From: Octopus sinensis | Taxonomy: Eukaryota | DNA length: 64,000 bases | NCBI RefSeq assembly: GCF_006345805.1 | Contig: NC_043007.1 | Span: 62,930,001-62,994,000, forward strand | Direction: 5' to 3' | In this document: one piece after another, positions 11,875 through 63,055 of the stretch | Layout of the letters: each line of letters starts with the position of its first letter | Numbering within the stretch: the stretch's first letter is position 1 | Notes under the pieces: model-generated | Told to the model about the DNA's origin: nothing | What the model saw: the letters and a program-made list of their open reading frames with translations, nothing else | The model's database searches: none | Made by a program: the position numbers and the translations under genes

Positions 11875-12606
11875 GTATATATATGTATTATATATATATA
11901 TAATATATGTATATATATTGTATATATATGTGTATATATATATGTGTATATATATATATATATGTATATATGTGTATATATATAATGTGTATATATATAT
12001 ATATGTATATATATGTGTATATATTATATATGTATATATATGTGTATATATATATATGTGTATATATATATATGTGTATATATATATATGTATAATATAT
12101 ATATGTATATATATGTGTATGTATATATATGTGTATATATATATATGTATATATATATATATGTATATATATGTGATATATATATATGTATATATATTGT
12201 GTATATATATATATATAGTGTATATATATATATATATATAGTGTGTATATATATATATATATGTTATATATATGTATATATATGTGTATATATATATGTA
12301 TATATATGTGTATATATATATGTATATATATGTGTATAATATATGTATATAATGTGTATATATATGTGTATATATATATGTATATATATGTGTATATATA
12401 TGTATATATATGTGTATATATGTATATATATGTGTATATATATATGTATATATATGTGTATATATATATGTATATATATGTGTATATATGTATATATATG
12501 TGTATATATAATATATGTGTATATATATATATATATGTGTATATATATATATATATGTGTATATAATATATGTGTATATATATATATGTGTATATATATA
12601 TATGTG

Positions 12607-12637
<31 letters not shown>

Positions 12638-12672
12638 GTGTGTATATATATATATATGTATATATATGTGTA

Positions 12673-12717
<45 letters not shown>
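10448..12717. repeat. Compound (TA)n/(TG) microsatellite array, ~2.27 kb
   Basis: Directly visible; it is the source of the spurious YI/YICV ORFs. Confidence 0.98.
10928..10977 (+). mobile_element. 50-bp RTE tail stub with (GAT)n inside the TA array
   Basis: CCCATGCTAGCATGGAAAACGGACGCTAAATGATGATG... differs at 4 of 51 positions from the reverse complement of 12718-12768. Confidence 0.85.
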
Positions 12718-12719
<2 letters not shown>

Positions 12720-12883
12720 TCATCATCATCATCATCATTTAACGTCCGTTTTCCGCGCTAGCACGGGTTGGACGGTTCGACCGGGGTCTGGGAAGCCAGG
12801 GCTGCACCAGGCTCCAGTCTGATCTGGCAGTGTTTCTACAGCTGGATGCCCTTCCTAATGCCAACCACTCCGCGAGTGTAGTG

Positions 12884-15460: not shown

Positions 15461-16060
15461 TATATATATATATAATGGAACTGTGATTATATATATCAGA
15501 CAAAATATATGTTGAAACAATTTGTTGGCCTTTTATGGTTTTTATAACTATTTATGTTATATAATATTATGTTATATATTATATTCATAGTATTTAATGT
15601 AATATTGTAATGTAAATAAATTATTGGATTGTCAATTGAATATTTCTATATTTAATTTATCTTTATAATTGAATTATACGAATATTTATATGGTATCCAA
15701 CTGAAGTACCAGTGAATTGGATGTTTAACACACCTCTTTGAAGGATTTCTTTTCCTCAGTTTGTTACTTTAAGGTAGTACTAAGATTATATTTTTTTTTA
15801 TTATTATTATTTTATATTTAAAAATGTTTTTTTTTTTTAATATCTGCATCTACACTGTTTTAATTTGTTTGAACTCCAACTGACATCAAGTGTTTTGAGG
15901 TATGCACATGGTGCCAGACTGGATTAAAAATAGGAATCTTTGATGACAATTAGAGATGAAGCCTAGCAAAATATTATCTAGATATAAATATTTTAATGTT
16001 TCTTCTCTAATGATCAAATTAATTGTCGAAAATATTTTAATCATACATTTGCTGAATTTA

Positions 16061-24539: not shown

Positions 24540-27500
24540 TGTATGGAATATTCTTTTCTAAGTGTTATAATGTGAATCCTTTTTGTAGGAACTCTGTGTT
24601 CTTCCTTTTTCTTTCACTTGTACGCATGGGTTCAACCACCTGTAACAGTGTTGGTACTGGGAATGTATCATACAGCCATTCCATAGGTTCTTCTAATCTG
24701 TCTGGTCCATTTTCTATGAATCTCTTTTTCAATTGGTTTCTGTGTCTTTTTTCAATACCTTTTCTGTTTTTAATTCCCTACATCATTTTTCCTTCTTCCC
24801 AGTACTGTTTTCATTTTTATATGACCTCATGTACACCTTATTGCCAATTTTGAAAAAAATTGGGATTGTCTTTCCTGTTTGTTTTCCTTCCTCGCCATGT
24901 AACAGTTTATCAAAAACTGATTTCACCTTCCTTGCAAACATCAGCTCTGCTGGTGAGCTTCCTGTTGGTGTATTGGGATTCTGTGTCACCCGTATACACC
25001 TAGGAATTGCGACAGAACAACTTCGTCTGTGATTTCCTTGTTTGCTTTTCTCAAAGCTCTTTTAAAAATGTCCACAAAACCATTTCAGAGGTTGGTCTTT
25101 TGCACTTAACAATGTCCAGCCATTTTGTAAAACTGTCAACTACTACTAAGTAGTAGTAACCATTTAACGGACTCACAAAATCAATATGTGGTCTTGACCA
25201 TGGACTTTTTACTTCTGGCCAAGGCTCCCATTTTTGAGTAGGCAACTTTGCTGCCAGAGCACATCCTCTGCAGCCTTTTAATACATTTTCAACTTCCTTG
25301 CCCATCTACTGCCAATACACATAAGTGCTGTCATCCTTGCAATCCCCAGATGTCCAATATGGAATTCTTTCAACATTCTTTTTTATAAAGTTCCGGGTAT
25401 CACTACCTTTTGGCCATACATCGGTATGCCATCACAAGTTAAATATATGTTTACCTGTTGCTGTTTTTTCTTACTGAACCTATTTTTTGTTTCCTTCAGC
25501 TGACCATAGATTTTTTTTGTTTCATTAATGAACTTATCTTTTGACATGTCACTTTATCTCCTCTAGAGTTATTGGTAACTCTTGTACAATGTTCCACATT
25601 ATGTGTTTAATTTCTGCTTCAGCTCTTAAGGCTGCTATTACTGTGTCCTCGAATAGTTCACCATTTCTGGGTATAAATCTCAATAGGCTATCAGCATATC
25701 CTAACTTTTGTGAAGGTAGATATTCCATTGTGTAGTCATAGTTTAATAGTATGGTGTCCCATTGCTGCAACCTGTTCGCTATATATACTGGGATTCCTTT
25801 CTTGAATCCATAAATTGTTAGCAACAGGCAATACCGTCTACCATGTATAAACCTGTGGAACTTTTTATGCCAGATATAATCAACAATGCCTCTTTTTCAG
25901 TTTGGCTATAATTTTTTATGCTGGCCATAGCGTCCTTGACATGTGAGCTCTGGCCTTTTGGCTGCCATCTTCACTAGTATCTGTTGCCAGTGTCATTTCC
26001 AACTTCGGATCGAAGTGTGTAAACAACAAGTCTGAAGTTAACATGCTTTTTAGTTCCTCGAATGCCTTCTGTCATTTTTCTGACCAAAACCACTTAGCAT
26101 CTTTTTTAACAGCTCGTTTAGTGGAGACCTTGTGTTGTGTATGTTTGGGATATATTCTTGATTGTAGACTAACAATGCTTGTAACAATTTGACATTCATT
26201 GGGGCAGGCATATTCTTTATTGCTGTAACCCTTGATGGGTCTGGTCTTCATCCCCTTTCATCAATTGCTTGACCTAAATATTTGATTATTTTTTCATCAA
26301 AAATTCATTTTTCATCTGTTAGTCTAAATTCATATTCATTTATTTTTCCAAATACTTTTTTTAATATGTTCAAAGTGTTACTCCACTGACTCGCTCTTTA
26401 TCAAAATATCATTGAGATAAGTGATAGCAAAGTCGCAATCATTTAACATTGTGTCCATCACTTGTTGGAATATAGCAGGTACCACTTTTACTCCAAAAGG
26501 AAGCCACTTGAATTTATACAATCCACGGTATGCGTTGCTTGTTAAAAGGTGTGTGTAATCTTCCTCTGCCTGTATCTGCAGGTAAGCCTCCGAGAGGTCT
26601 AGCTTCCAGAAAATTTTTCCTTCATTTAGTTTTAAGAACACTTCTTCTGGGCTTGGTAATGTATAATTGTGTTTACCTAAACAGTCATTTAATTCAGTTG
26701 AAAAGTCCGCACACACTCTTTATTATTTTTATTCTTTACATAAACCATCAGAGCTGCCCAGTCTGAATGGTTGACTTTTTTAATTATAGCTAGATTTTCT
26801 AGTCTTTCTAGCTCTTTATTAACCTGGTCCAACACTGCAAATTGTACATTCCATTTGGGCATAAAAACAGGTGTTGCCTTTTCTTTTACTGTGATCCTCG
26901 CTTTTGTTTTAGTGCAACAGCCTAATCCCTCCAAAAAACATTTGGAAACAATTTTTTAATATTTTGTCTCAGTTGTTCTACTTCATTCGAACTTTTGACC
27001 TTGCTAACTACATTTTCACAGAGAACACTAATGGGGGTATCCCACATTTTAAATAACTCCATGCATTCTGTGCCAAATAGGTTTAGTGAACACAAATGAT
27101 TGTCCTTTTCATTTCACCTAGAAAAGTAAAATTGCAAATACATTTTCCAATGAAATATAATTTCTTTCTTGTAACATCATATGCTACTTTATTTGATTTA
27201 AGTAATTTAGGTTTACCTATTTGTTGCTATGTTTCTTCATTTATGATAGTGATGGCACTACCCATGTCTTATTGCATTTTGACACTAGCTGTTTTGATTC
27301 TCGCCTTGATGGATTTTCTGTTTGTTGTACAAACTTTTTCCTCTACTGACGAACTATTTTTTTTTTCTCATTTTTCATCATCTTTGTTCTGCAGTACGAT
27401 TTAATGTCCTGTGTTCCCTCGATGAAAACACTTTGCTTTTTTGAATCGACACTCTTTTCTCAAGTGCCTTCCACCGCATGCCATACATGGGTTTATCTTC

Positions 27501-28498
27501 ACTTGTATATCGCATTTTTTGTGAAACACTTTATCCGTCTTCTGATTCTTCCACACTGGTTTTATCTGCATTGGATTTCTTCTGTATCGTGCCTTACTGT
27601 TAATATTATATCGCACTCTTCTGACAGTTTCTAAGAGAGTTATATTTTGGTTCATTTCTAGCTTTGTGAGAATTTTCACTCTGACTTCTGCATCCTTTTT
27701 AGCAATAAGTCCGTGTGCAAAAATCAGGCACTTGAACAATTCTGGAATTAGTTTATCCAGTTTAAATCTCTTGCGCTCTCTGTTCACTCTACCTGCATAT
27801 GTGGTAAAGTCTTTGTTGTCACTTTTCTCCATGTTCAAACACTTCCAACATGTGTTGAATAATGATATTATTTTCACTGAACATCTTACATAAAATGTCG
27901 AATGTGTCCATGAAATTTATGTGAGAATCTTTTTTAGGCAGTATAAAGTTACAGTATTTTAATGTTCTGTCATCGCCAGTTTCCTTAGAATTAGACGCAT
28001 TTTCATTTCGGCTGTCCAGTTTTGGCATTCGTTTTTGTTACTGAAGATTACAAGGCATATTACTGAAGATTTGTTCAAATCTTCAGTAATATGCTTCGAC
28101 AGTGACTTCTTACGGTTCATGCTTAAATTTATTTATTGAATTTACTATATGGTCTGGCAAAAATGTATTTTCTGGTTTTGTGACCAACTTCATTAGTTGT
28201 AGCATTTGTTGTTGTAACATTTGTTGTTGTTGCTGTTTTTGCAACTCAACTAACAAGTTTTCCATAATCTTACAGATTTTTTTGTAAAATATGTACAGCA
28301 AAAATGTTGAGTTTTTAATTTCTCCATGTGAAAATTTTTCAATGTCATCTGCGTGAATTGTTTACTTTTTTGTAAAAAAAATTTTTTTCAACGTTATCCA
28401 TGTGAATTGTTTATATCCTTGTTGCCACTGTTATAATGTGGATCCTCATCCATTTGTATGTTATTGCCAGCACTGTAATATTCTTGTCGCTACAATTA
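24540..28498 (-). mobile_element. Ty3/Gypsy (Mag/K02A2.6-like) internal region gag-pro-RT-RNaseH-INT, heavily frameshifted
   Basis: ORF track: gag with zinc knuckle (CMACGGRHLRKEC); RT (KLDLSEAYLQI, LPFGVK, YLNDILI); RNase H (ANRLQQWDTILLNYDY, GYADSLLR); integrase (CRGC, PWSRPHIDF, VVVDSFTKW). Confidence 0.92.
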
Positions 28499-36249: not shown

Positions 36250-37594
36250 ACATCAAACAACCCACTCTCCACCCAAACTTCTCTTGTCAAATGCAAAATT
36301 TCATGGTATGATGCAAGGTAGGTTTGAGGATATTGCAGAGATGTAAGCACATATCTACTCTTCATAGACAATGAACTTGAGTATAAAATCTTGTGGGTAT
36401 ATAACAGTGTTGGACTGGTTGGAGTCAGTATTTTGATGCCAGAAAAATGGTTAGATAAAAATAATTTGTAGTATGTGATAAAATAACTAAGCTTAGGCTT
36501 GTCATAGACAATACAACAGCCACAACAATTTCTGCATATACATCCCAATCAGAACTGAAAGATGAACAAAGGTGTAGGAGTGGCTGTGTGGTAAGTAGCT
36601 TGCTTACGAACCGCATGGTTCCGGGTTCAGTCCCACTGTCATGTATGCACACTGACATTACGCAAACAGTAGACTTCATACACATCAGGAAATGGGATAG
36701 GCAACTACTATAGATATGAAATCTGTCATCATTGAACAATGTACCACACCATAAAAACTGGTGATTAATGTCTTTAAGATAAGAGCCTGAAGAGAGAGGT
36801 ATGGAAAAGTATATCTTCACCTAGACAAAGGTTTAAGGAAACACTAGTTAATGCATATAACAAAGAGGAGATAAACTTATAACATAAAGGATGATTGGGA
36901 GTTGAAAAGACAGTCTAAATCTATGGAGCAGGTGCCAGCCAAGTATAAAGTGACCTGATAGTGAAATGGTATGCTCAATAGTAGTAAAGCTAAGAAACCA
37001 GCCTAGGGAGAAAATGGGGAACAAAGAACAATATCATAACTAAAAGTAAAGTTAGATATCAAGTATACTTAGCAAGGAGAGAAGCTTAACTTAAAGATTT
37101 GTTTCTGTAATGAAGCAATTAGAAGCAAGAGATGTTCCACATTGCAAATCAGTGTATCAATGTAAATCAAAATAATGGGAACCAATAAGTGACAGAGTAA
37201 TAGCAGCATATATACTTGTCATCACTGATGCTGAGAAGAAAGATGTATAAGAATCTTACAAGAGGAGTGAGAGAAAGGGGGTGGGGGAAGACTCAACAGA
37301 GGAGCCAAGTTGACAGTGATACAGTCAAAAACACAGTTATGAATATGAAGGCAGGGAAAGTAGCAGAACCTTTAGGGATAATTGCTGAAAATATCTGGCA
37401 AAGTAGAACACATGTTAGTCATTTGCATAGTCAGTCAGGGAGTGCAAGAAAGTGTCACATCCAATGACTGGCATAGCAGTATCATCATCAACTGTTACTA
37501 AGGCAAAAGAGATGCTCTCAAAAGAAGCAACTACAGAGCTAAGTTATGATAGTTACTGAATGTTATAGAACAACTGATTATGAAGGGAATTACT
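36250..37594 (+). mobile_element. Old RTE LINE fragment (APE endonuclease to RT start)
   Basis: Plus-strand pieces VGLVGVSILMPEKWLDK, ISAYTSQSELKDEQ, MKAGKV and NDWHSSIIINCY*GKRDALKRSNYR parallel the 14523-15503 ORF and RTE endonuclease motifs. Confidence 0.7.
36571..36638 (+). mobile_element. Isolated SINE head (68 bp) inside the RTE endonuclease fragment
   Basis: GGTGTAGGAGTGGCTGTGTGGTAAGTAGCTTGCTTACGAACCGCATGGTTCCGGGTTCAGTCCCACTG matches the 29491 head. Confidence 0.85.
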
Positions 37595-42231: not shown

Positions 42232-42620
42232 TGCAGGTACAGACATGGTTGTGCAGTGAAAATTTGTTTCCTAGCTACATGGTTTCGGGTTCAGTCCAAC
42301 TGCATGTCGCTTTGGGCAGGTGTTTTCTATTACAGCCCCAAGCTGACCAAAGCCTTGTGAGTTGATTAGGTAGATGTAACCTGAGAGAATCCATCCATAT
42401 ATGTGCTAATATATCTCTTTGCCTTGACATTGCATGATAGCTGTAAATGAGTGTCACTCTAACGGAAGCAGTAATTTATTCCAATCTTCTGTGAAAATAT
42501 GTCTCACCATGAGGAATATTACTTTACTAGGAAACAAACAGGTGAGGGTTCTAGAAAATCTGCCTCAACAAATTCTGTATGACTGATGTAAGGATGAAAA
42601 AAGTGAACATTAAGCAATGA
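42232..42620 (+). mobile_element. SINE, same type as 8612
   Basis: Head and body collinear with 8612-9029; tail runs into a microsatellite. Confidence 0.75.
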
Positions 42621-42624
42621 TAGT

Positions 42625-42680
42625 GTCTTATATGTGCATATACGTTTGTATGATATATAAATATATATATATACATAGGC

Positions 42681-42711
<31 letters not shown>

Positions 42712-42753
42712 CATGTACATATATACACGCATATATATATCTACATATATATA

Positions 42754-42830
<77 letters not shown>

Positions 42831-42907
42831 TTATACATATATATATACATACATCTGTATGTATATATATATTATATATGTATGTAATATATATATATAT
42901 ATGTATG

Positions 42908-42939
<32 letters not shown>

Positions 42940-43056
42940 TGTATGTATATATATATATGTATGTATATATATATATATGTATGTATATATATATATAGTA
43001 TGTATATATATATGTATGTATGTATATATACATATATGTGTGTGTGTATATATATG

Positions 43057-43122
<66 letters not shown>

Positions 43123-43192
43123 TGTGTGTGTGTATATATATGTGTGTACATATATATATTTGTATACATGTATTTATGGATGTGTGTGTGTG

Positions 43193-43223
<31 letters not shown>

Positions 43224-43240
43224 ATTTATATATGCATATG
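42625..43240. repeat. (TA)n/(TG)n compound microsatellite
   Basis: Directly visible. Confidence 0.95.
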
Positions 43241-44029
43241 GGATAAACAACCCTCAGCTAAACATCCATTAATGTTATATCACCTGAAGAAATGAATCCA
43301 TGAACATGATCTACCCATTGCCTATGGGTACTACAGACTACAGTGTAATCATTCCAGGAGTACAGACTGATTTTAAGAGACATATGATTTGTGGAAATGC
43401 ATGTAGCGATGCATTAAAATGTTTATAAATTCCATAGACAGATTATTGCAATTGCTGTATGTATGCATGTGTGTGTGTGTGTGTGTGTGGATCAAAACAA
43501 ATTGAAATTTGTTGGTATTTTTAGTTTCAAGCGTGATGCTAGTCATCAGCCATTTTGAATTTGAATGACAGAAGTTGACAGTTATTACCGTAAGTTGGGC
43601 TGTGATTGATGGAGGAAGGTCACGCGGTGTTGTGGTTTGATGTTGGTATATGGGTAACAGTTAGTTGGAAAATACCACATGGTGAACAGAAAATTGATCA
43701 TATGGGGGACAGGAAATGGACCATGTGGCAATTAGGAAATTGGTCAGGTTGTTGCGGGGGATAAAAGGAAGGGGTGGTATGTGCAAGTATATAGCTCATA
43801 TGGTTTTGCGTGCATGTGTATATTGATGCAAATGTGCGCATCTGTATCTAAGCACATATGCCAGCATGCATACACGCACATGTATGCATGCACATACGCA
43901 CACACACGCATGCATATTCATTCATATGTACTTATATATATATACTTGCATGCATGTACATATGCATACCAATGTGCATGCATGTGTGTGCACATTTGCA
44001 TGCATGCATTAGTATACATGCGCAAAACG

Positions 44030-44620
44030 AGAGTCAGGGATTGGTAAACACATCAATAGCCATATCAGAGATGACATGGATATGTTAAATCACCTCCCAA
44101 AAAATGTCAGGGAAGAAACAATCATGGTTTCATTTGACGTAATTAATTAATATACCAGTATACCTCATAATTATGGGCTAGAGGCAATTCAGCTTCGGCT
44201 GGATCAATTTCTGGAAGAAATACCAGAAAGGATCAGCAAAGAATTCATAATTCAATCGGTTGAATTCATCCTACGAAACAATCACTTCAAGTTTGACAAT
44301 ACATTTTATCGACAAAAATCTGGAATTGCCATGGGCACTCGGGCAGCTCCAGTCATTGCAAACCTAACAATGAGCTATCTAGAAATAATAGTATACCAGC
44401 AATCTTTATCTACCTTTGGAAACCCCCTTGCCCAATACATAAAAGAAAATTGGAAAAGATTCCTAGACGACTGTTTCATACTCTAGAATGAAAACACAGA
44501 TAAACTCCTGAAATTCAAAAGTTTATTGAAGAGCACCAACCCAAACATACAGTTCACAATGGAGTACAACCAAAAGGAGCTCCCATTCTTGGATATACTA
44601 ATTAAAAAAATAAACCATAA
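44030..44620 (+). mobile_element. Penelope-like element, RT fragment with two stops
   Basis: Reads SHIRDDMD...VSFDVIN*YTSIPH...FYRQKSGIAMGTRAAPVIANL...WKRFLDDCFIL*...IQFTME...LPFLDILI, the Penelope RT motif series. Confidence 0.9.
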
Positions 44621-45320
44621 CACGTGGCCTATGCCAGTCGTGTATAACCAGCCCAATTGAACAATAAACTTTGCTTGCAAAGACCTGTTGAAGTAAGTGA
44701 AATCTAAATCAAAATCGCTGGCATGGCTGATGACGCCAGTAGAAGTGCCATCCAAGCGTGCCTGTTGCCAGGGCTGCTGACTGGCACCCATACCGGTGGC
44801 ATGTAAAAAGCACCATTCTAGTCTGATTATTGCCAGTGTTGCCTTACTGGCGTATGTGCCTGTGGCATGTGAAAAATAACATTCGAGCATGGTCGTTGCC
44901 AGTGCCGCCAGACTGGCTCTCGTGCAGGTGGCATGTAAAAAAACATATTCATATATATATATATATATATATATATTCATACATGTTATATATGTATATT
45001 CATACATATTTATATATGTATATTCATACATATTTATATATGTATATTCATACATGTTTATATATGTATATTCATACATGTTTATATATGTATATTCATA
45101 CATATTTATATATGTATATATATATTCATGTATATATGTTTATATATGTATATATATATATTCATGTATATATGTTTATATATGTATATATATATATTCA
45201 TGTATATATGTTTATATATGTATATATATATATATGTATTCATGTATATATGTTTACATATAATATATTCATATATATCAGCATGGAAAGTGGACGCTAA
45301 ACGACGATGATGATGATGAT
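44621..45320 (+). mobile_element. RTE 3' UTR and tail interrupted by a TA-rich minisatellite
   Basis: 44621-44945 matches 170-470; the tail CAGCATGGAAAGTGGACGCTAAACGACGATGATG lies at 45278-45320. Confidence 0.8.
44985..45260. repeat. 24-bp minisatellite (TATATTCATACAT[A/G]TTTATATATG) grading into longer units
   Basis: Directly visible; gives the (MYEYTYIN)n ORF. Confidence 0.9.
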
Positions 45321-48429: not shown

Positions 48430-49682
48430 CATCCTTTAAATCTGAAGGTCTTGGAAATTTTTATAGTCCTAGATATTGTCATCATTTGTAACATGTGAAT
48501 TAAGCATTTGGATTTCTCCCCAAGATCCCAAGCTCAGCCATACTTGGTTCCAGATAAGCTGGTATGTATCCTGTTGTTCCAATACTAATAGGAATGAAGC
48601 TGGAAGTGTATCTTGGGTATTGGATTTGCAAACTACTTATCAATGGTCCATAAATATTCTCTTTCTTTTGTGTTTTTCTAACCACATTGGTGTCCAGAGG
48701 GCAGCTGATTTCCACAACAGAACATATCTTTTCTTTGTGGCCCTACGCAATGATACCTTGCTAGTTGTGTTTTAACTTGGTGGTTGTTTTAATTTTTAAG
48801 TTCCACCAATATTCTTTTGACCCATTGGGCTCTACATGGTCAACTTCAGTTGTAGGTGTTTTCTTTATTGTTATCCTGTTCCAGACTATTCTGGCCATTA
48901 CATCATTCCTCATAGGAAGAAAATATCTTGAAGACATTCTCTCACCGTTGGTAATAATGTGGTTCATGTCTTCAGTCTTGGTCTTGCACAACCTGCATTT
49001 GTTGTCTGTCAATGTTTTCTGCCTTTTATGATGTAGGTACTTAGTGGGGATCTCTTGTTTTTGGATTACATGGATGTAGCCTTCAAAGTGGAATGTCGTA
49101 AACTTTTCTGTGTTCATTGCCAAGTTTTAGACATGGTCAGTTCGTTCTATGGTTTGTGTTTTACATGCCAAGTATCCATGTACTATCTTTTCAGTGAACT
49201 GGTCCATTTGTTTTATTCAGTTCTAATAAATGGATTTTACCAATGTTCCTTGAGGAGAGATCTGTATCAGCTCTTTTTTCACACCTCCCCTCAAGTTTTT
49301 CATACCTCTCCTCAAGTTTATTAGCTATCCTAATTATATTGTTGGCTTCATGGTCTCAAACTTGGTCTCTTTCCTCAGATGTTTCAATGTCACAATACAT
49401 GTTTCATATAACATCAATATAGATTTGAGACCACAGCTGCCATCCTTTGTGAAAAGTATATAGCCTGTCTACATTTCCATTGATGTTGAAGTTTCCTGTA
49501 ATACTAAGCAGCTTGCAAGTTTGAGCATCTATCTCATTGGATTGAATTCTTGTAGTGACCAATTGAGAAGGCTAAACATAGGTGTGAGGACAGGCACTGC
49601 AAAGATTTTGTGAGCAATGTGCTTCTTGTAAGCTGAGAGTTCTGGTGACCATATTCTCTTTACTTGCACAGAAACATCTTTG
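48430..49682 (-). mobile_element. Second R4/Dong-like RLE retrotransposon fragment (RT end, CCHC, RLE)
   Basis: ORF track: LSAYKKHIAHKIFAVPVLTP; EGY...QKQEIPTKYL...CRLCKTKTEDMNHII...RYFLPMRND; EYWWN; EISCPLDTN...YGPL...FIPISIGTTGY. Confidence 0.85.
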
Positions 49683-49799: not shown

Positions 49800-50674
49800 C
49801 AGGGTGAAATGGGTAAATTGTCACCATTTTATATTTTTAATTTCGCGCATTGTTTGTTTTTGGTTTTGTTGACTACACAGTATAGTAGGATCAGTTGGGC
49901 ACTGTCTGTGAGAAAAAGAGCACCATGATGCAGTTCACTCTGCACAAAAATTTGGAAACAATATGCTGTATTACTTGGCATCCACGCCAGAAGCTCCAAT
50001 ATGAACATTTCAGAGTGTTTGGGTGTCAGTCTGAGGACATGTACCAAGAGTGATAAAAATCAAACATGCAGTCAGCACCATGATGTTTGGAGTGATCACT
50101 AGAGACAGCGACGTTATGCCTCTATTCATCTTCCCACACGGCCTCATTCTCAACACAGAGGCCTAAAACAAATGCCTGGAGGAGGTAGTGCTGCCCTGGT
50201 TCAAGAGGATGGCTTTTGGGAGATCCTATGTCTGGCAACAGAACTCTGCACCTTGGCACACAAGCAGGAAAACCCAGTCGTGGCTGTCAGACAATTTCTG
50301 CGACTACATCACCCCTAACATGTGGCCATCTAACTCCTCAGACTGCAACCCCCATGATTATTATGTGTGGGGCACAGTTGGACAAGAGACCAACAAAAAA
50401 ACTCCTTGTAACACGCACCAAAGATGAACTGAAGGCAAGGATTATGGCAGCATTCATCAACTTAAACAAGGAGACCATCCAGAAGAGTTGCAGGAGATTC
50501 CAAAGCCATCTGGAGGCCATGGTTGAAGCCAATGGTGATTTTATTAAATAAATTTACTCTTGTGTATTTCAAGATATTTTTATGTAATTTCGGTAAATAT
50601 ATCCATTAAAATGAGATGTCACTATTATTTTCATTTTTGTGTAATTTAGACAACAGTTTATTCACCACATCCTG
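49800..50674 (+). mobile_element. maT (DD37D) Tc1/mariner element, internally deleted
   Basis: TA at 49798-49799 and 50675-50676; CAGGGTG/CATCCTG ends. QQNSAPWH...WPSNSSDCNPHDYYVW has 37 residues between the second (D>N) and third catalytic positions. Confidence 0.85.
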
Positions 50675-51789
50675 TATATTTATGCTTATATTTATTCAGT
50701 TTTGAGGCTTGCACCCATTACTACCCTGAGTTTTCTGCAAAATAGAAACAAAACAACTCCATATCAACAGTGGGTTGTATGACTTTGAATAAATGAGTAA
50801 AACTGTATACGTTTTTGTTATTACTACTGGATATATGTGTGTGTATGTATACTTTATATAAATGTATACTTTATATACATGGCTTGGTGTGTGTGTGTGC
50901 ATATGCACATGTTGTGTATGCTTTAACATCCCATTCGATGGCTGAATATGCCACAGAATGAGATGATGTAATGCTGATTAGGATTAATGCCTATTCTCTG
51001 TTTGGTAGAATTGAAGTAAGTACTATTAGTTGCTGTAATCTCACATCAAAGCATAATATCAGTGTTTGAATACTTACAATGACCTTTTACCAAAAATATC
51101 TTTTAACCTTTGTCTTCACAGAAGACTGAAATGTATCTTGCTATGTATCCATGAAGCACCATTTTGATATGTATGATTATAAAGGTGTTCATAGCTTAAA
51201 TGTTTCTCATGACCACTTTTGGCTTCTTCCCTCCTGCTTTAGAATGCTGCCTCTCCCATCAGTTTTCTGGTTTCATTTCATCCTCTCTTAAATCAGTTAG
51301 TTATACTGTGTATCTAGTGTTTGTCAAGTCTCCATGTATGTCTTCTGCTCTGTACATACTGTTGAGCTCTTTTCTTGCATTTCTTCAAATTTTCACATCT
51401 ATGATTTTTTTTTCTTAATACTCAGATATCTTAATTAAGTGGAATAAAATATCCCATGTCTGCTTTTAATATCAAGATTTTTTTTTTACATGCACAAGGT
51501 TATACATTACATTAACATACTTGTTTGCATACACTTGCATATTTGTGCAATCATGATTACATACTCTAACATTTAATACATGCATATAGCTGCATAAGTG
51601 CATGCACATATGCATAGGCTTCAGTTATTTTTACTATCTTTCTAGTGACAAAAACAAAATCATATCCTCTTATTTCACTAATTATTGAACCATAAGTTTT
51701 GGAATCGTTGCTGTGCTTTAAACTTTTATTGATCAGGGAATACATCAAACTTATATACAGAATAGTAAGAAAATCTATAAGCAGGGCAC

Positions 51790-52040
51790 ATCATCTATGA
51801 CTTCACGCCAAAATTGAAAAGATCTATATTGACAGGAGAATAAGACGAAGGGATATAATATCACCCAAACACTTTAATGCTGCTCTGGAAAGCATCTTTA
51901 AAAAGTTTAACTAAGATGAAAAGGAAATAAATGTAAATGGTGCATTTTTAAGTTATTTATGCTATACTGACAACATGGTCCTCTTCTCAAAATTATGCAC
52001 GTAAACTGGATCAAATGTTAAATGAACTGAACAGTGAAAG
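51790..52040 (+). mobile_element. RTE-type RT fragment of a different subfamily, decayed
   Basis: Reads GDIISPKHFNAALESIFKKFN*DEKEINVNGAFLSYLCYTDNMVLFS. Confidence 0.7.
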
Positions 52041-52059
52041 TAATATGTACGTGTACTTG

Positions 52060-52680
52060 CATTCACCTGAGGTGGGTTGAACCAGCTCCAACCAATGAGT
52101 TCTCCACATCACTCACAAATGCTGACCACAACAGACAGTCGGCTGCAGTCAAGGAGCATAGATGCCATAGCTGTAGTTGTCATTCACTCTTGAGGTGTGG
52201 AGCTCATGTTTGGAGTTTCCGTGAGAATACTAGTTCACATGTGATCCCTGGTCACATGCATTCACACTTTGGGATAGTGTTATCTGTAGCACCTCATCTT
52301 GCTGTTGATTGTCACCCATTACAGAGGATTCACTGATCAAGTCACTGTCAGTTATCGGAGCAGGCATGGCCTGGATTTGAAGCAGGTACTAAACACATGC
52401 TTTTACAAAATGTAAGGGGTATCTCACTCCCAATGGCCTTCCAGCACACCAGACACCAACCTGAAATTTCTGAGGGCTTGTGCTAATGGTAGATAGTCAT
52501 TGAGCCTACACGAGGTTCATCTGTCCTTTTGACAGGTTTTATTTTTAGTCCTGCTGGGTTTCTAGCAACCTCCTCACCAGACAAGCAAGCCTAGTAGGGG
52601 TGCCGGTTTAATCACCAATGACCTGAATATGCAACAGGTTGTACTGAATTCCATGTTACCCGTAGCACTCATGAGATACT
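52060..52680 (-). mobile_element. GC-richer segment resembling a LINE (RTE) 5' UTR and endonuclease start
   Basis: Contains GGCTTGCTTGTCTGGTGAGGAGG and AAAACCTGTC motifs that resemble RTE 5' UTRs as recalled. Family and orientation are inference. Confidence 0.4.
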
Positions 52681-52684
52681 CCGG

Positions 52685-52805
52685 TCCTGCTAGTAGTCAT
52701 ATGCTTATCTCAAAGCTTAAGCCATACAAGTGTAAGTTCATGCCATAAATGAATGGTGAAACCATGAATGGCTCAGGAACCAGACCTAATCCTTGGGATC
52801 GTATT
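52685..52805 (+). rRNA. Decayed 18S rRNA 5'-end fragment (pseudogenic, roughly nt 12-130)
   Basis: 52685-52737 matches the invertebrate 18S start as recalled (TCCTGCCAGTAGTCATATGCTTGTCTCAAAGATTAAGCCATGCATGTCTAAGT) at 47 of 53 positions. GGTGAAACCATGAATGGCTCA (52755-52775) and CCTTGGGATCGTA follow at the expected spacing. Confidence 0.9.
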
Positions 52806-54769
52806 CCTCACTGTGAAGAGAAAGTAATATAGCAGGACTAAAAATAAAAGTGAAGAAAATACAAAACCTGTTCAACAGCCATGCAAAGTGTGAAGTCATC
52901 GAAGTTAATTATGATACCAAGCTAACTAAATTCTTTTGGACAGCTGGTAAAAGTGAAATACAACCCTTTTGAAGATAGTAAAAACTTGAATTCAAATTCT
53001 ATTATCTTTTTGGTAAATTAATGTTATAAAAAGTAAGAGGTCTCATGTATGACAGCAGCAACTTCTGAAGCAGGTAAAATACGGAATAGAAGCATAAAAC
53101 AACATAATGCAGTATGGAAAACTGCTTGTTAGAAATTACAAAACACAGAAAAATTTATCAGTGGATTACAGATTAAATTAAAAATACATCATTAACCATA
53201 TTAAGAGGAGGTAGTGGAGACAAGTTGAGCATGGGCCCATACAAATGACAAGAAATAGATATTGCTGTGTATAGAATGAAAGCTGAGAGAGACAGTCAGA
53301 TATTTTGAGAAGATTGAAAGACAATGTTGAAGTTACATTATGGGTGTTACATGAATGAGAGAGATTCAGGAGAGTTACAGTTGGTACTAGCTTGGGGTGG
53401 CCTTCGCTTTGAACTGGGGTGAGAATGGCAATTCTATTTTATATATGGCAATTATAAGGCAATTCTATGTTATATAGTGATGTAATTTAAAACCATTTTA
53501 AACATCTCATTTTACATAGCTACTGGAAGTAAATATCAGATCATTTTAGATTGCTGGATAAGATAGACCAGTATTGTATCTAGTAATGAAATTTATCCCA
53601 TCTTTAATAGTGACAATGGCCTTTAAAAGTGCCATTGGACTTGAAAGATATTTGTATACTGTTCCAAAATTAAAGACATAAAATTAGTGACCCCATGATG
53701 GTAGTGTTTGTTAGAGAGTAATTTAAAACTGTTTCAGCTGTGTAGGAAAAAAATGCAAAAATCTCTCTGGTTAGTGATTTGCGTGCCTCAGGTTTGCCAT
53801 AACGTACCAGTTTATTGTTACTCGATTTTTCAATAATTAGCTGTTCAGATTTCAATTTTTGTCATTCAACTAAGCTTTTCATTCTTTTTTTTTTTTTTGT
53901 ATTGTTAAATCTATGCCGATAATTTACAGCCATTGATTATATTGACTATAATCCTTCATTTTTAAAGTTATACTTGTACCTAGTCAGATGAAATCATGTA
54001 TACTGTGTGTGTGTGTGAATGAGAAATCAATGAGGGAATTGTTTTGAATAATAATCCACATTTTTGATTGAAAGACTTTTCAAAAGTTCATAATTCTTAA
54101 GATAAAACTGAAATATAGTCATGATTTTGAATGATTAGAAATAAAAATAATTTAAAAATCCTTTCCTGTAACCATCTCGCAGTGGAATTAAACAAGATTA
54201 CATTTTTATAACAATTTAAAATGAAGCACATCAGAAGTAGGTTTGCAATAGTATGTGCATTTTTTATTTCCTTTTTCTTATCTTTTTTCATGCATCTCTT
54301 CCATTTTAATATAGTTTGGAGATACATTTATATTTCTTTAACAAGAATAATACTGACTATAACTTTGAAGTTTCAGCCAGCTAAGCCATCAACATTACAT
54401 ATATGTGCACATTTGTATAAAGTATTTTCTGTTTTTTTAGCACTCTTGATTTCCCCAATTCTTTGAATCATGAAATGGAATTCACCTCCATTTTAGCTTC
54501 TTTTTTAGCTTTTTCTCTTTTATCATACAAGTTTATTTCTGTGGCTTCTAAATACAGGATATGATTTTGAACTAGTCAATTTTTCCTTATCTTCATAAAT
54601 CTAAGTATGACCAAGTAATTAAGAAGTTTGCTTTGAAATTATTAAATCCCAAATTCAATCCCACTGGATTGTACCATTTGCTGGTATCTTTTACCATGAC
54701 CTTGGGTAGAGCTAGTACAAGGAATTCTAGGTGAAAACCCTCTGCCAGATAGATTGTGCCTAATATTTA

Positions 54770-55899: not shown

Positions 55900-57030
55900 G
55901 TATTAAAGAAAAATAGGGTACAATGATTCATATGTTTACTATGAATTTGCTTTCATCTATAGACAAGAAAGGATGCAATGTGCTATTTGTTACCTACATT
56001 TGGTAAATGATTCTCTGAAATCAATAGCGTTAAAGCAACAACTACTGAATGTTCCTCCTCAACACGAGCAAGGATGAAAGTTTTATTTCTTTAAAAGCAT
56101 CAGGGGAATGCTCTCAAGAAGATGAAGCTGGATTCAACGGGAGTATTACAAGAAATGAACCAAAAGATCACTGAAGCTTTGTCTGTTGTAGCAAAACAGA
56201 AAAAAAAAATCCCTGCTATAATTGAGGAAAGTTTGATCAAAATTAAAATGGTAGAAATTGTATTGGGAAATGGATTGGAGAAAAAAGAAACTTGGAGTTA
56301 TTTCACTATCGAACAGTACTTTTAAAAGAAGGATCAGCAAATAGCCATTGACATCAAAGGTCAAGTTGTGCAGATCAATTCAGTAACATTTGGCTTATTT
56401 TCAATTCAAATTGATGAATCAACTGATGTGGTATTATGTTGGCAGTTACTGGTGCTTGCAAGATATGTTCACCCTGGTACATTTAAAGAGGAATATCTTT
56501 GTTGTTCTCTTGAAACGAAAACCAAACCTCAGAAAATTTTTTGTAAGAAAGCTGCCATGTGCAACCTGGAAAATTGGATGAGAAAGGTCAATATTAAAAA
56601 TATTGCAGTGTTTGAGAAACTGTTATCAATTCTTGCTGCTGACCAAGAGCTTTCATAATTTGCAAAAAAATTAAATTATGCAATACTTGACAGCACTGAA
56701 AGTGCAAAATCTATTCAAATTATCAATAGTAAAAGTTCCTGATGACTGTCAAGATGAATTCCTGGAGTTAAAGACTGATTTGCAAGCAAGAGATGTATTT
56801 GATCAGAATTCAGTCACAAAATTTTGGCCATTAATGTGCAATTCTTACTTAAAAGTAGCAGAAACAGCTATCTATTCATTGCTTCCATTTGTGTCAAGCT
56901 ATCTTTACAAATCAGGATTTTCAACTCTGTTGCAAGTGAAAATGAAGTAGATTTAAGGTTGAAAGTTACTTGCATTGTATCTTCCTCCATGTCTCACAGA
57001 ATTGGCAAACTGAAGCATGTTTCAATTAAC
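55900..57030 (+). mobile_element. hAT (Charlie/Buster, ZBED8/SCAND3-like) transposase remnant
   Basis: FSIQIDESTDV...QLLVLARYV...KEEYL and a C-terminal LLPFVSSYLYKSGFSTL dimerisation motif; many frameshifts. Confidence 0.85.
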
Positions 57031-58620: not shown

Positions 58621-61214
58621 ATACCCTTAAAAAAGAGAACAAAATGAAATGTATAATCTTTGAGTTGATTCCATTGTGGCACCAGTTTTCTGCTGAGGAT
58701 ATTACATTAAAGTTTTGTTTTGATACAGATTAAGGAAGGACTTCTCAACATTACAGCTATGAAAGAAGTCAGGTTATTCTAAGCAGGATTATAGTAGCAA
58801 AAAATCTTACCTGAACTAAGGAATAAGTAATGTGGAAGACTAATATGCTTATAACTGTCAAATGTTAGAGCTGAAAAAAAGTTGTGTAGCAAGATTTTAG
58901 AAATATTTGCTTTCTAAGTATATAAATGTTGGCTCAAGTTGCTTCTCAACTCCCAGTTGGGATTGTTGCAGAGTGCCTGTTATGTTATACTACTTTAGAT
59001 AAACTGCAACTATCATGTTTTCTTCCATAGGTAAAATATTTTTAAAGGCATGACTTCACTAAATACTGTAATCATTTTTCAGAACCCATTTACTTATTGG
59101 TTACCTTTTTCTCCAACGCATTCCTCGTATAAATGTATGTGTGTATGCATGTATCATATGTTTTAGTTGTACATTATCTGATTGTTGAAAATCTTAACTA
59201 GTATTAGGCTTACTTTATCTATCTTTTCATTATTGTAATAGGATATAATTTATCGCATTATTTCCACGCTATTTTATCGTTTAGAGAAATGCTATTGTAT
59301 AAATAAAAATTGATCAAAATTTCATGCACTTAAAATTGATTGAGGTAATTACATTTCTTTTTTTCCAACATGATCTCATTTATTCTCAATTTTTTAAAAT
59401 GTTTATTGGATGCTCACTTATTTTCAAATTGAAGAACATAACTCTAACTGCAAGATCAGTAATCTAATTTATATTTGAAAAATGGAATTAGGTAAACATC
59501 TAAACAACATATGAACTAAATCTCCCCTTCTTTAATAATCTGAAAAATTTAACATCTCCATGTATTGATAGTATTAAACATTTTACATCAAAATTTGTTC
59601 CTTCCATATACCTGTACACCATTCAAGAGCTGCAGTTATGTCATGCTATGCTTTCAACAATGATTTGTATTTTGTCACTAGCACTTTGCTATGTCTAACT
59701 AAAATTTAACCCTTACAAGCTCTAACCATTTAACTAAATAGTGGAGAATACAGTTTTCTAAGTTGAGTGTATTTGTTGAATGTTCTATTAGTAGCAGTAT
59801 TTTCTTCAGATTCTCTCATCACTTTCAAATTTAAGTTTTTTTCCTTTTGAGTTTTCAGTTTCTCATCTGCATTTATAAAGAATGATTTTGGTTATGAAGT
59901 AATTATGTTAATTTAAAAGAACAATATAAATAAATAATCTCAAATTTTATATTATTTTTAGACTTTGTAAAACAATTTCTGACATCTAATTTTGCTAGTA
60001 CAATTCAGAGATTAACGTTTGTGAAAAAAACCAGCCAACCGACAAAAAAATTTTAAATGATAATATAAAGACAACAAATAATGTATCTACAAATTATAAG
60101 TTGATGTTTTGTATAGATTTCTTGTCAGGATTGCTGTTTATCTATTGAAAGAAAAGCTGAGCTAATTGTTATTATGGCTCCAGTCTTTCATAGACCATTC
60201 GCTGTTAAGTTACCATATCAACTAACATTTTCTGTTTCTGGCTGCAATGTAAATTGTTTTCTCTAAGTTCAGTAGATCCGTTGCTAGCTCAGATCCCAAT
60301 GTCTAGAAAAGAAAATCAATACTGTCTGATTTCCGTTTCCAATCTTCCTTCAGAAAATCATTTGTGATTGGTCCTTCTTCGATCACCATTAGTTATTCGC
60401 TGTTCCCATTACATCATGGTTTCAAGCCTCTTTTTACAACATAGTCTTTCAGTAGCACTGTACTCCCCTCTGTTCACCTATTCAATGATATCTGCATGTG
60501 AAAATTCTTTGATTTGACTTGCAATACATTCTATTGGGATTTCTTAGAAACGATTGATTTCATGTTTCATAGACTGGCCTTTCTTGAGGAAGTAATAAAT
60601 ACTATTGATTAATCGTTTTGGTTTGTGCTTAAAAGTTTATTGTTATTGGGGTAGGAGAGGCAGTGGGAGTTGCCAAAAATGGTGAAATGCCAGACTATAT
60701 GCTCGACTGCATTTATTTAGCTTAATCATTTTAAGCTAAAAGTTCAGTTCTTGTCATTGCCAACTTTACCTTTTTATGAAGTCAAAAAAAATCAGATACC
60801 AGTTATATATTTAAGTAAATTCGTTCAACTATTGTTCCTTAGAAAAGTTAACCTTGTTCCTCATTGAAGAAAATCATTACAAATAGCATTGGTGAAGCTA
60901 GTGTGCCTGCTTGTAATAAGTTTTATGGTACATCCCTAGCCAAATTCAGTGGCTTTTAGAATTATTATATGCATGCACATACAATTTAACAGATATTTTT
61001 CAAAAATGTGTTTTTAGATTTTTTAATTTATCTAGTCTGTGTATATACTGGTTATTGAGTTGGATAAAATGGCAAACACAAGTAATGTGGTTTTACATAG
61101 CCTTAAAATGATTAGACACAGGGTTTCAGGTTCAATTTGACAGTTTCCATAAAAGGAAGAGAAAAAACAATATCTTATCCAAAAATATCAACTAGATTAT
61201 GGCTGAGAGATAAC

Positions 61215-61620
61215 AGTTTATTCAAAGTAGCTACCCCAGCTTCCACTATGGCCTCAAGATAGCTCCAGAACCTTGTGCATTCATTCCTCACTGTGTCCAT
61301 GGGCAGTTCTTTGAACTCCTCTTTGATCTTGGCAACCAGCTTAGCCTTGGTATTTCAGGCAGAGTGGTTGGTGCTTTTCTCAACCATCTTCCACACATAG
61401 TAATCCATGGGATTATAATCAGGGAATTAGGAGGCCAGCAATTTGGACTGGTAAAGTCATAGAAATTCTCTGACAACTACTGCTGATTCTTTCCAGAGGT
61501 ACAGCAAGGAGCTAAACCCTTCTGCCACACATATGGCATTCCTGCAGGAACCTTCTCCAGCCAGTTATTGTGCTTCCAGTAGCTTCACATAGCCATCTAA
61601 ATTGAGCCTAAAGCCCTGTT
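61215..61620 (-). mobile_element. maT-type transposase C-terminal fragment
   Basis: ENFYDFTSPNCWPPNS / YNPMDYYVW / KLVAKIKEEF / FWSYLEAIVEA parallel the 50188-50551 frames. Confidence 0.8.
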
Positions 61621-61985: not shown

Positions 61986-63055
61986 CCCTTTCGTTACTAT
62001 ATTTCTGACCAAAATACACCCCTTATGTGTTTCAATTAATTTCTAACATAATCGTAAATTTAGTCTGGTTTCATTAAACAACTATAACTTTTTTATTTAT
62101 CAATATATTAATGTGATTTTTGGAAGATAATTTAATGAAATGTTCTCAACCAATTCTATACTATAATTTTTGTCACAAAGTGACTCTAATTGCAGGTAGA
62201 TACAGGTAAATTCAACAAAATATAAAATTATTAAAATTTTGTTCAAACATCGCTATAGAAAATGGGTTATTAGCTAATATTCAGTTGGGTATACAACAAA
62301 ATTTTATGATAGAATTTGTTATTCTGGGTAACTTTCTGATACCCATAATAATATTTAAGGCAAAATAGTCTTAATTTCATTTAAGGTTGTGGGAAACCAC
62401 TAACTATCCTTTCTTTCACTTTGTTTACATTTAGCGTAACGGTTCGTTTCCGCCGTAATGAGTTCAAATAGACTCATCGGAAAAAGTAAAAAGAAATAGT
62501 CTATCACTTTACTCTCCTGGGAAAGTCTGTGGCTTGGTCCAGTTTCTTCAGAAAAATCATCGAAAGAAACAGTTTTTAAATTTTCACTCCATTCAGGTGC
62601 CAATTCATTTTCTTTATCGCTGTTTTCACTGATTCACTGTTTTCACTTTCGGAAAATGAAACATCAGATCCATTATCAAATACCACGTGCTTTTTTTTTT
62701 TTTTAAGTCATAGAGTTAGATTTCTTCAGTAGAAAATCCTTCGAATTCTGACTCGCTGCTTGATATAATGAAATTCGTATCCATTTTTTGTCATAATTAC
62801 AAATTTTGAAAACACAATAGGAACAAATTTCAGAAAAAAATCTCCCAAAATTCACGGAATTAAAATTACACTTCGATCGTTGTACAAAACTGTAGATTAA
62901 CTGTTTACGAAGTATAATCACTTGTTTTCACGAATGTACTAAAGGGATTTGCTCTGATATTCTCATTTAAATATGAATAGGTAAATACGGGCGGGTTTGG
63001 TCACATTAACCAAAATTTTTTTCGGGTGGCTTTGGGCAGTTTGGTAACGAAAGGG
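61986..63055 (-). mobile_element. piggyBac deletion derivative (1070 bp) with intact TIRs and an N-terminal transposase remnant
   Basis: TTAA at 61982-61985 and 63056-63059. Perfect 12-bp TIR CCCTTTCGTTAC/GTAACGAAAGGG. Minus-strand ORF 62400-62603 (GPSH...IDYFFLLFP...LITAETNRYA) continues *WFPTTLNEIK, typical of a piggyBac/PGBD N-terminus. Confidence 0.92.

What the first reader, a model, noticed from the sequence alone, without database searches (positions are those of the whole stretch)
52060..52850. 18S rRNA 5' fragment fused head-to-head to a LINE-like 5' region
An unmistakable but decayed 18S start (47 of 53 nt, then the GGTGAAAC..GAATGGCTCA block) sits alone in an intron, with no further rDNA. 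It directly adjoins a GC-richer segment resembling an RTE 5' UTR on the opposite strand. Simple template switching from LINE RNA to rRNA would give the same orientation, so the antisense arrangement needs another explanation. Options are a retroelement family carrying anti-18S sequence in its 5' UTR (able to pair with the 40S subunit), an element that inserts at the 18S 5' end and was moved with its flank, or an inversion during integration. rRNA-derived SINE heads and rDNA-targeting LINEs are established; this configuration is not one I recognise.
Basis: partly seen in the sequence, partly recalled or inferred. Interest (0 to 1): 0.75.

Follow-up and report, generated by a model that had tools for sequence, protein, structure and literature searches.

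The report
Orphan 18S fragment in composite insertion
A decayed copy of the first ~140 bases of 18S ribosomal RNA sits in octopus-like DNA as part of one 773-base patchwork insertion into an old jumping gene; its repair-type footprints make it a one-off rRNA pseudogene fragment rather than a new ribosome-pairing element.

Summary
The 18S fragment is real. Rfam SSU_rRNA_eukarya scores 55.9 bits, E 9e-15, starting at model nt 1 (window 52677/8), sense on the + strand. It is not free-standing. It is the right end of a single 773-bp insertion (52047-52819) bounded by a perfect 11-nt target-site duplication. Joining the flanks restores the reverse-transcriptase frame of an old + strand RTE-like LINE (RVT_1, E 3e-6). 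The claimed "RTE 5' UTR on the opposite strand" is not supported. The 630 bp left of the 18S start match no protein, RNA family or repeat on either strand. The true internal break is not at the 18S start. It is a 19-nt (perhaps 24-nt) inverted copy of the target flank at 52537-52555, which ends exactly where the target was nicked. This marks a template-switching, two-ended insertion: twin-priming-like reverse transcription or polymerase-mediated repair. Antisense rRNA/LINE chimeras made by twin priming are already described in primates. The duplication and filler are identical at 30 of 30 sites, while the 18S part is 13-18% decayed. The template was therefore probably already an old 18S pseudogene. 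Whether other copies exist could not be tested. The result is ordinary, with one neat mechanistic footprint.

The parts
51729..53429 (+). Old, decayed RTE-like LINE (reverse-transcriptase region to C-terminal motif) that serves as the target and is split by the insertion
   Evidence: Reading frames give ..RRDIISPKHFNAALESIF..NGAFLSYLCYTDNMVLFS..LNELNSESN | IAGLKIKVKKIQNLFNS... The frame-stitched translation across the joined flanks hits Pfam RVT_1 at E 3e-6, 27.5 bits, residues 28-122, spanning the join. RTE-clade assignment is by eye from motifs, not by a tool.
52036..52046 (.). Left copy of the target-site duplication GAAAGTAATAT
   Evidence: These are the only two exact copies in 64 kb, with 0.11 expected by chance. 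The repeat finder family D2. Removing 52047-52830 restores NELNSESNIAGLKIKVKK in frame.
52047..52536 (.). Segment A: 490 bp of unidentified, non-coding, CpG-depleted sequence; strand of origin unknown
   Evidence: GC 0.465, CpG o/e 0.19, TpG+CpA o/e 1.64. No in-window copy. No Pfam, Rfam or protein hits in any frame. phmmer of its 100-aa + ORF gave only tandem-repeat junk. No fold signal on either strand.
52537..52555 (-). Filler: exact inverted copy of the 19 nt of target flank that lie immediately beyond the right duplication. It may be 24 nt (from 52532) if a 17-nt slip is allowed.
   Evidence: the repeat finder I1 is 19/19 against 52831-52849; I3 pairs 52532-46 with 52857-71. These are the only two occurrences in the window at up to 2 mismatches, and 0 of 100 shuffles produced any match. 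Anchored alignments show no similarity on either side of the 19-mer (z between -0.6 and 1.2).
52556..52676 (+). 121 nt contiguous with and upstream of the 18S-like start (begins GGG). Candidate 5' ETS of the source copy, or other sequence.
   Evidence: Read from the sequence. No Rfam, protein or repeat match. Fold z-score +1.2.
52677..52815 (+). 18S rRNA-like 5' fragment, nt 1 to about 125-145, sense on the + strand. It is decayed: a 4-nt deletion near nt 9-12, about 13-18% substitutions, and nt ~100-120 scrambled.
   Evidence: Rfam RF01960 at 55.9 bits, E 9.1e-15, from model nt 1. blastn 46/53 and 17/20.
52820..52830 (.). Right copy of the target-site duplication GAAAGTAATAT
52831..52871 (+). 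Target flank that served as template for the filler (52831-52849, possibly also 52863-52871). It encodes the AGLKIK motif of the old LINE.

Best explanation
The finding is one 773-bp composite insertion into an old RTE-like LINE.

Shown:
- It is bounded by an 11-nt target-site duplication.
- Its right third is a sense copy of an 18S 5' end (nt 1 to about 140), preceded by 121 nt of contiguous upstream sequence.
- Its left 490 bp are unidentified non-coding sequence.
- Between the two parts lies a 19-nt exact inverted copy of the target flank. It stops precisely at the position where the + strand was nicked.

Inferred:
- The two halves were synthesised from the two ends of a staggered break and joined in the middle.
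- The right target end primed on the 18S-like template. A short resemblance (target AACAGTGAAAGTAAT against 18S AACTGTGGTAAT) is an own-reading lead for this; its 18S reference is from memory. Synthesis ran towards and past 18S nt 1.
- The other half grew from the left target end.
- Before the halves were joined, a polymerase briefly copied the nicked + strand up to its 5' end, leaving the filler.
- This is the topology of twin priming with template jumping by a LINE reverse transcriptase. Polymerase-theta or replicative template switching would leave the same footprint.
- The duplication and filler are identical at 30 of 30 sites, but the 18S part is 13-18% diverged and fully CpG-depleted. 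The template was therefore most likely an already decayed 18S-derived sequence (an older pseudogene or its transcript), not functional rRNA.

The block has no detectable function.
For: - 18S identity, start and strand.
- Duplication and restored RT frame.
- Filler flush with the duplication, unique in the window, with no homology beyond it.
- No LINE, RT, RNA-family or ribozyme signal in the remaining 630 bp on either strand.
- No second copy in the window or in 21 kb of O. vulgaris DNA.
- CpG o/e 0.22 against a background of 0.24, and the probability of 30/30 identity (about 2e-3 at 10% per-copy divergence).
- Published precedent: antisense 5S rRNA and tRNA chimeras whose 5' start faces the LINE, attributed to twin priming (PMC13174262).
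Against: - Segment A was not identified, so its polarity, and with it the two-ended model, is inferred only from the position of the filler.
- There is no poly(A), LINE tail or known endonuclease motif to prove reverse transcription. A DNA-templated repair event is equally compatible.
- The 18S 5' end is 121 nt away from the internal joint, unlike the primate 5S and tRNA chimeras, where nt 1 abuts the LINE.
- The 'copy of a copy' argument rests on 30 AT-rich sites. It weakens to P of about 0.05-0.1 if A/T sites mutate slowly.
- Absence of other copies is based on only about 85 kb of cephalopod DNA.
Confidence: 0.55

Rival explanations
1. The block is a contiguous rDNA-derived fragment. On this reading 52047-52676 is the 5' external transcribed spacer of an rDNA unit (functional or orphon) in rDNA orientation, copied together with 18S nt 1 to about 140 from one template. 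The 19-nt filler would be a brief polymerase excursion in the middle of that template.
For: - The 18S copy starts at nt 1 and continues upstream without a visible break for 121 nt.
- Both A and the 121-nt piece have the same GC content (0.47) and strong TpG+CpA excess (1.64 in A). This fits a formerly CpG-rich spacer.
- Nothing suggests coding or a known repeat.
Against: - Leaving a template and then returning to it around a flank-derived filler is less economical than a joint between two products.
- There are no structure signals.
- The host ETS could not be obtained, so there is no positive match.
Confidence: 0.2
2. This is a classical LINE/18S twin-priming chimera. All of 52047-52676 would be the 3' part of a minus-strand RTE-type LINE, and the 18S start would abut its truncated 5' end. 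The 19-mer would be the element's own AGLKIK-coding stretch. Its identity to the resident LINE would either have helped to place the nick (an RNA:DNA hybrid at the target) or be coincidence.
For: - On the minus strand the 19-mer reads AGLKIK in a frame that continues as ..EEVARNP AGLKIK PVKRT...
- By eye there are faint RT-like strings (LLHIQVIGD, CWKAIGSEIP).
- The topology equals that of the primate 5S and tRNA antisense chimeras.
Against: - There is no similarity to the resident LINE on either side of the 19-mer.
- Pfam finds nothing for single frames or for the stitched peptide.
- Six-frame queries against 5.8 billion proteins return nothing.
- tblastx, and tblastn with the window's intact LINE RT, find nothing significant.
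- An exact 19-nt island flush with the nick, inside otherwise unrelated sequence, is what copying produces, not what descent produces.
Confidence: 0.1
3. Either a retroelement family carries antisense 18S in its 5' UTR and can pair with the 40S subunit, or an element inserts at the 18S 5' end and was moved together with its flank.
For: - The 18S-like part seems older than the insertion. It therefore evolved for some time outside rDNA and was copied at least once more.
- No 18S-derived transposable element is listed in the 2024 review of rDNA-derived elements (PMC10946416), so such a family would be new.
Against: - The block is closed by a duplication on both sides, with no LINE body attached.
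- It has no ORF, RT or ribozyme.
- No second copy exists in the window or in L001.
- Diagnostic-pattern scans of public contigs were empty, though they are nearly uninformative for cephalopods.
- The middle of the block contains sequence copied from this particular target.
Confidence: 0.06

Closest known systems
Twin-priming chimeric retrocopies (5S rRNA/LINE-1 and tRNA/LINE-1 antisense chimeras; L1 5' inversions)
   Same: A target-site duplication of LINE-typical length. Two parts that appear to have been made from opposite ends of a staggered break. An rRNA-derived part whose 5' end points inward. Priming at a short resemblance between target and template.
   Different: The partner segment is not a recognisable LINE and there is no poly(A) or LINE tail. 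The rRNA part carries 121 nt of upstream sequence. The joint contains a 19-nt inverted copy of the target flank. The host is a cephalopod, not a mammal.
Dispersed rRNA pseudogene fragments (the SSU-rRNA / LSU-rRNA entries of repeat libraries)
   Same: A short, truncated, decayed piece of 18S outside the rDNA arrays, non-functional and CpG-depleted.
   Different: It is embedded in a larger composite insert and was probably copied from an already decayed copy.
Templated filler insertions of polymerase-theta end joining / replicative template switching (MMBIR/FoSTeS)
   Same: A short stretch copied in inverted orientation from within about 40 bp of the break, with sharp ends and possibly an internal slip between TTTT repeats.
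   Different: A clean 11-nt duplication and an rRNA-derived segment point to an endonuclease/reverse-transcriptase origin for the break. The enzyme that made the filler cannot be told from sequence.
rRNA-derived SINEs (5S-derived SINE3, 28S-derived SINE28) and rDNA-specific LINEs (R-elements, including 18S-specific ones)
   Same: rRNA-derived sequence lying next to retroelement sequence.
   Different: There is no evidence of multiple copies, no LINE-derived tail, no RT gene, no rDNA context and no ribozyme.

Membership tests
Eukaryotic SSU rRNA-derived pseudogene fragment | Significant match to the SSU rRNA model or sequence | tested here: met
   RF01960 at 55.9 bits (above gathering score 50), E 9.1e-15. 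blastn E 6e-12.
Eukaryotic SSU rRNA-derived pseudogene fragment | Truncated, mutated and outside an rDNA unit | tested here: met
   Only model nt 1 to about 125-145 are present. There is a 4-nt deletion and 7 mismatches in 53 universally conserved positions. No other rDNA is found in the window.
LINE-mediated chimeric insertion by twin priming | Target-site duplication bounding the whole composite | tested here: met
   11/11 duplication with restored RT frame.
LINE-mediated chimeric insertion by twin priming | One segment is a LINE 3' part ending in its tail at one duplication | tested here: not met
   No LINE or RT homology in 52047-52676 on either strand, and no poly(A) or microsatellite tail.
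LINE-mediated chimeric insertion by twin priming | The two segments are in opposite orientation with respect to their template RNAs | tested here: inconclusive
   The 18S part is sense on +. The polarity of segment A is unknown. The internal flank-derived filler argues for a joint between two products.
LINE-mediated chimeric insertion by twin priming | Endonuclease consensus at the nick | not testable with these tools
   The nicks are inferred at AATAT^AGCAGG (+) and ACTTTC^ACTGTT (-). Cleavage preferences of octopod LINE endonucleases are not known to me.
rDNA 5' ETS-18S fragment (contiguous) | The upstream sequence matches the host 5' ETS | not testable with these tools
   No cephalopod rDNA could be reached. 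Six-frame protein-database queries, which would have caught ORFs called on rDNA contigs, were empty.
rRNA-derived SINE or other 18S-carrying retroposon family | Many dispersed copies with shared ends | tested here: inconclusive
   No further copies in the 64-kb window or in the 21-kb O. vulgaris locus. Pattern scans of public contigs gave 0 hits. The sample is far too small to exclude a family.
rRNA-derived SINE or other 18S-carrying retroposon family | Internal promoter-bearing head and LINE-derived tail | tested here: not met
   No tRNA, 5S or 7SL part. The tail is unlike the LINEs in the window.
rDNA-specific LINE (R-element) with co-transcribed rRNA flank and HDV-like ribozyme | RT ORF adjoining the rRNA junction | tested here: not met
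   No RT in the block. The block is closed by the duplication.
rDNA-specific LINE (R-element) with co-transcribed rRNA flank and HDV-like ribozyme | HDV-like ribozyme at the 5' junction | tested here: not met
   No ribozyme family at E up to 10 in 51000-54000 or 52030-52690.

The most novel reading that the evidence does not exclude
The block could be a copy of an octopod retroposon family that has carried an 18S 5' module for a long time. On the element's sense strand the module would be antisense and so able to pair with 18S rRNA. The internal 19-mer would be native, meaning that element RNA paired with the target next to the nick and guided integration. The apparent age gap between the 18S-like part and the insertion, together with the exact 19-nt complementarity flush with the cleavage site, does not exclude this.
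Probability: 0.05. Interest if true: 0.8.

Novelty: new member of a known kind. Interest (0 to 1): 0.25.

Why it matters
In itself it matters little: it is a dead rRNA-derived fragment in repeat-rich DNA. Its value is as a clean natural footprint of how non-LTR-type insertions are resolved in a cephalopod. It shows a duplication-bounded composite whose internal joint carries sequence copied from the nicked target strand up to the nick. This extends rRNA chimeras of the twin-priming type, catalogued so far in primates, to molluscs and to 18S. If the source of the already decayed 18S module turns out to be a repeated element, it would be the first 18S-derived module reported in a transposable element.

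Tried and rejected
- Whole-window and 3-kb Rfam scans miss the 18S piece. Only a 200-nt scan finds it.
- Six-frame translations of 52047-52680, and of the whole insert, searched against 5.8 billion proteins gave no hit, even at E up to 10.
The 100-aa + ORF alone gave two weak hits. Both are tandem-repeat translations with no DNA similarity.
- Pfam on the single frames and on a stitched minus-strand peptide gave nothing.
- A home-made HMM from 120 relatives of the window's intact LINE failed even on the positive control, so it was uninformative.
- Local and anchored alignments of the minus strand against the resident LINE showed no similarity beyond the 19-mer. I therefore dropped my own earlier by-eye reading that the segment is an RT fragment.
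- tRNA scan: none found.
- Folding of A on both strands and of the 121-nt piece gave no signal.
- Exact look-ups of window ORFs in the protein collection found none, so the source assembly and orthologous locus could not be fetched.
- Pattern scans of metagenome, genome and viral contigs used the diagnostic 18S variant, the junction and two unique stretches. All returned 0 hits and are nearly uninformative for cephalopods.
- The DNA transposon and Helitron readings were rejected from the sequence: there are no terminal inverted repeats, and the 11-nt duplication is atypical for them.

Full report
**Observation.**
The + strand of 52677-52815 is a decayed copy of the 5' end of eukaryotic 18S rRNA. 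A second block, GTGAAAC..GAATGGCTCA, lies at 52756-52775. Nothing comparable occurs elsewhere in the window.

Rfam misses the fragment when the whole window or 3 kb is scanned. When only 52640-52840 is given, it reports SSU_rRNA_eukarya at 55.9 bits (gathering score 50), E 9.1e-15, starting at model nt 1 and window 52678. The match is solid to about nt 100 and plausible to about nt 125-145 (..CCTTGGGATCGTA..). The copy has a 4-nt deletion near nt 9-12, and nt ~100-120 are scrambled. The segment to the left is indeed GC-richer, 0.46 against 0.30-0.33.

**Surroundings.**
The DNA on both sides belongs to one old, frameshifted + strand LINE of RTE type. The clade assignment is by eye, from motifs such as ..RRDIISPKHFNAALESIF....LSYLCYTDNMVLFS.. 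and ..AGLKIKVKK...

The 11-mer GAAAGTAATAT occurs exactly twice in 64 kb, at 52036-52046 and 52820-52830, with 0.11 occurrences expected by chance. Deleting 52047-52830 gives ..NELNSESNIAGLKIKVKKIQNL.. in one frame. The stitched translation across that join hits Pfam RVT_1 (E 3e-6, residues 28-122). So 52047-52819 (773 bp) arrived as one insertion with an 11-nt target-site duplication. The 18S piece is its right end.

**The host.**
An almost intact LINE elsewhere in the window (13230-15551, minus strand) is 80% and 76% identical to Octopus bimaculoides and O. vulgaris proteins. A 21-kb O. vulgaris locus shares repeats with the window at 76-92% identity. The window is therefore octopod-like DNA. 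No host exon was recognised, so 'intron' remains unchecked.

**The neighbour of the 18S piece.**
I found no support for this:
- no Pfam hit in any frame;
- no hit for six-frame queries against 5.8 billion proteins, even at E up to 10;
- nothing significant by tblastx against the resident LINE, or by tblastn with the window's intact LINE RT;
- no Rfam family, including rRNA, snRNA and ribozymes;
- no tRNA;
- no other copy in the window or in the O. vulgaris locus.

The 100-aa + strand ORF gave only two weak hits to translated tandem repeats, with no DNA similarity.

**The internal joint.**
The one thing the segment shares with the resident LINE is an exact 19-mer. 52537-52555 is the reverse complement of 52831-52849. 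These are the only two occurrences in the window even with two mismatches allowed, and none appeared in 100 shuffles. The flank copy begins at the first base after the right duplication, so the internal copy ends exactly at the inferred + strand nick (..AATAT^AGCAGG..). On the minus strand the 19-mer reads AGLKIK, which tempted me to see an RT fragment. However, local and anchored alignments show no similarity on either side of it, and a stitched peptide has no Pfam hit.

An exact island with sharp edges, one of them at the nick, is what copying of the nicked target strand up to its 5' end would leave. It is not what common descent would leave. A second short inverted match (ACAGGTTTT, 52532-46 against 52857-71) suggests that 24 nt were copied with a 17-nt slip between TTTT runs. 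This is possible but not secure.

I therefore divide the insert as follows:
- A: 52047-52536;
- filler: 52537-52555;
- C: 52556-52819, made of GGG, 118 further nt, and then 18S nt 1 to about 140.

**Mechanism (inferred).**
A joint that carries target-derived sequence in the middle of an insertion bounded by a duplication points to two products grown from the two ends of a staggered break and then joined.
- On the right, the minus-strand 3' end would have annealed to the 18S-like template. By my own reading, with the 18S reference from memory, the target AACAGTGAAAGTAAT resembles 18S AACTGTGGTAAT. Synthesis would then have run through nt 1 and 121 nt further.
- On the left, the + strand 3' end would have produced A.
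- The filler and the following GGG would be the trace of template jumps at the join.

This is the geometry of twin priming. A 2026 catalogue of primate LINE-1 chimeras reports that 5S rRNA and tRNA segments are typically antisense to the LINE with their own start at the junction, and attributes this to twin priming (PMC13174262).

The present case differs in four ways. The partner is not recognisably a LINE. There is no tail. The 18S start is 121 nt from the joint. The joint carries a flank-templated filler. Polymerase-theta-type or replicative template switching on DNA templates would give the same picture, and sequence alone cannot separate the two.

**Age argument.**
The two duplication copies and the filler/flank pair are identical at all 30 paired sites. 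The 18S-like part differs from universally conserved 18S positions at 7 of 53 sites, about 13-18% overall, plus indels. The insert's CpG o/e (0.22) equals the background (0.24), and segment A has a marked TpG+CpA excess. With 10% divergence per copy, the chance of 30/30 identity is about 2e-3. With 5% it is about 0.05.

This suggests that the template was already a decayed, methylated genomic sequence: an older 18S pseudogene, an rDNA orphon with its spacer, or an element carrying such a module. This locus would then be a copy of a copy. The argument rests on few, AT-rich sites and is suggestive only.

**Rivals.**
- (a) All of 52047-52676 is 5' ETS, copied contiguously with the 18S start. This is compatible with the composition and the lack of homologues. 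It needs an excursion and return around the filler, and I could not obtain cephalopod rDNA to test it.
- (b) The whole segment is a minus-strand RTE 3' part and the 19-mer is native. This is contradicted by the absence of any further similarity.
- (c) A family with an antisense 18S head, or an 18S-targeting element. The block is closed on both sides, has no ORF or ribozyme, contains sequence copied from this very target, and has no second copy in about 85 kb of cephalopod DNA.

Pattern scans of public metagenome, genome and viral contigs were empty but carry almost no weight. A 2024 review lists 5S-, 28S- and IGS-derived modules in transposable elements, but none from 18S (PMC10946416). Reading (c) would therefore be new if a genome-wide search supported it.

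**Verdict.**
The object is best filed as a dispersed 18S pseudogene fragment inside a one-off composite insertion of the twin-priming / template-switching kind. That makes it a new member of a known kind, of modest interest. Its most instructive feature is the nick-flush, flank-templated filler. The decisive test is a genome-wide search for the parts and junctions plus comparison with the host rDNA spacer. It could not be run here.

Noticed in passing
window 13230-15551 (minus strand); fragments at 7-153, 2009-2759, 37382-37540: A nearly intact LINE with two ORFs (326 and 413 aa), split near 14472-14522. Its reverse transcriptase carries an internal PHD finger. The closest named relatives are Octopus proteins (80% and 76%). 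About 50%-identical relatives occur in Hydractinia, Branchiostoma and Mercenaria, and in some 'bacterial MAG' records that are probably host contamination.
   Followed up: partly
window 52776-52790: Within the 18S-like copy, the highly conserved nt ~100-120 (TTAAATCAGTTATGGTTCC) are replaced by GGAACCAGACCTAAT. This reads like a partial inverted copy of the same stretch. It may be a micro-inversion or template switch within the fragment, or chance.
   Followed up: no
window 10445-12740, 42617-43300, 44483-45300: Very long TA/CA-type microsatellite arrays that produce spurious ORFs of up to 611 aa (YIYI..).
   Followed up: no
window 25549-27877 (minus strand) and 48764-49126 (minus strand): Remains of other retroelements: an RT piece (RVT_1, E 3e-11) next to a gag-like ORF with a zinc-knuckle-like motif, and a zf-RVT piece (E 1.5e-4).
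   Followed up: partly
window 50100-50550 (+), 61178-61476 (-), 62403-62633 (-), 56326-56950 (+): By eye these look like mariner-like transposase remnants (two of them), a piggyBac-like N-terminus and a hAT-like fragment. Pfam gave no hits for these short pieces, so the labels are unverified.
   Followed up: partly
window 51522-51623: A weak Rfam match to the mitochondrial control-region structure mtDNA_ssA (26 bits, E 0.85) in a CATA/TGCA-rich low-complexity stretch. It is most likely chance.
   Followed up: no
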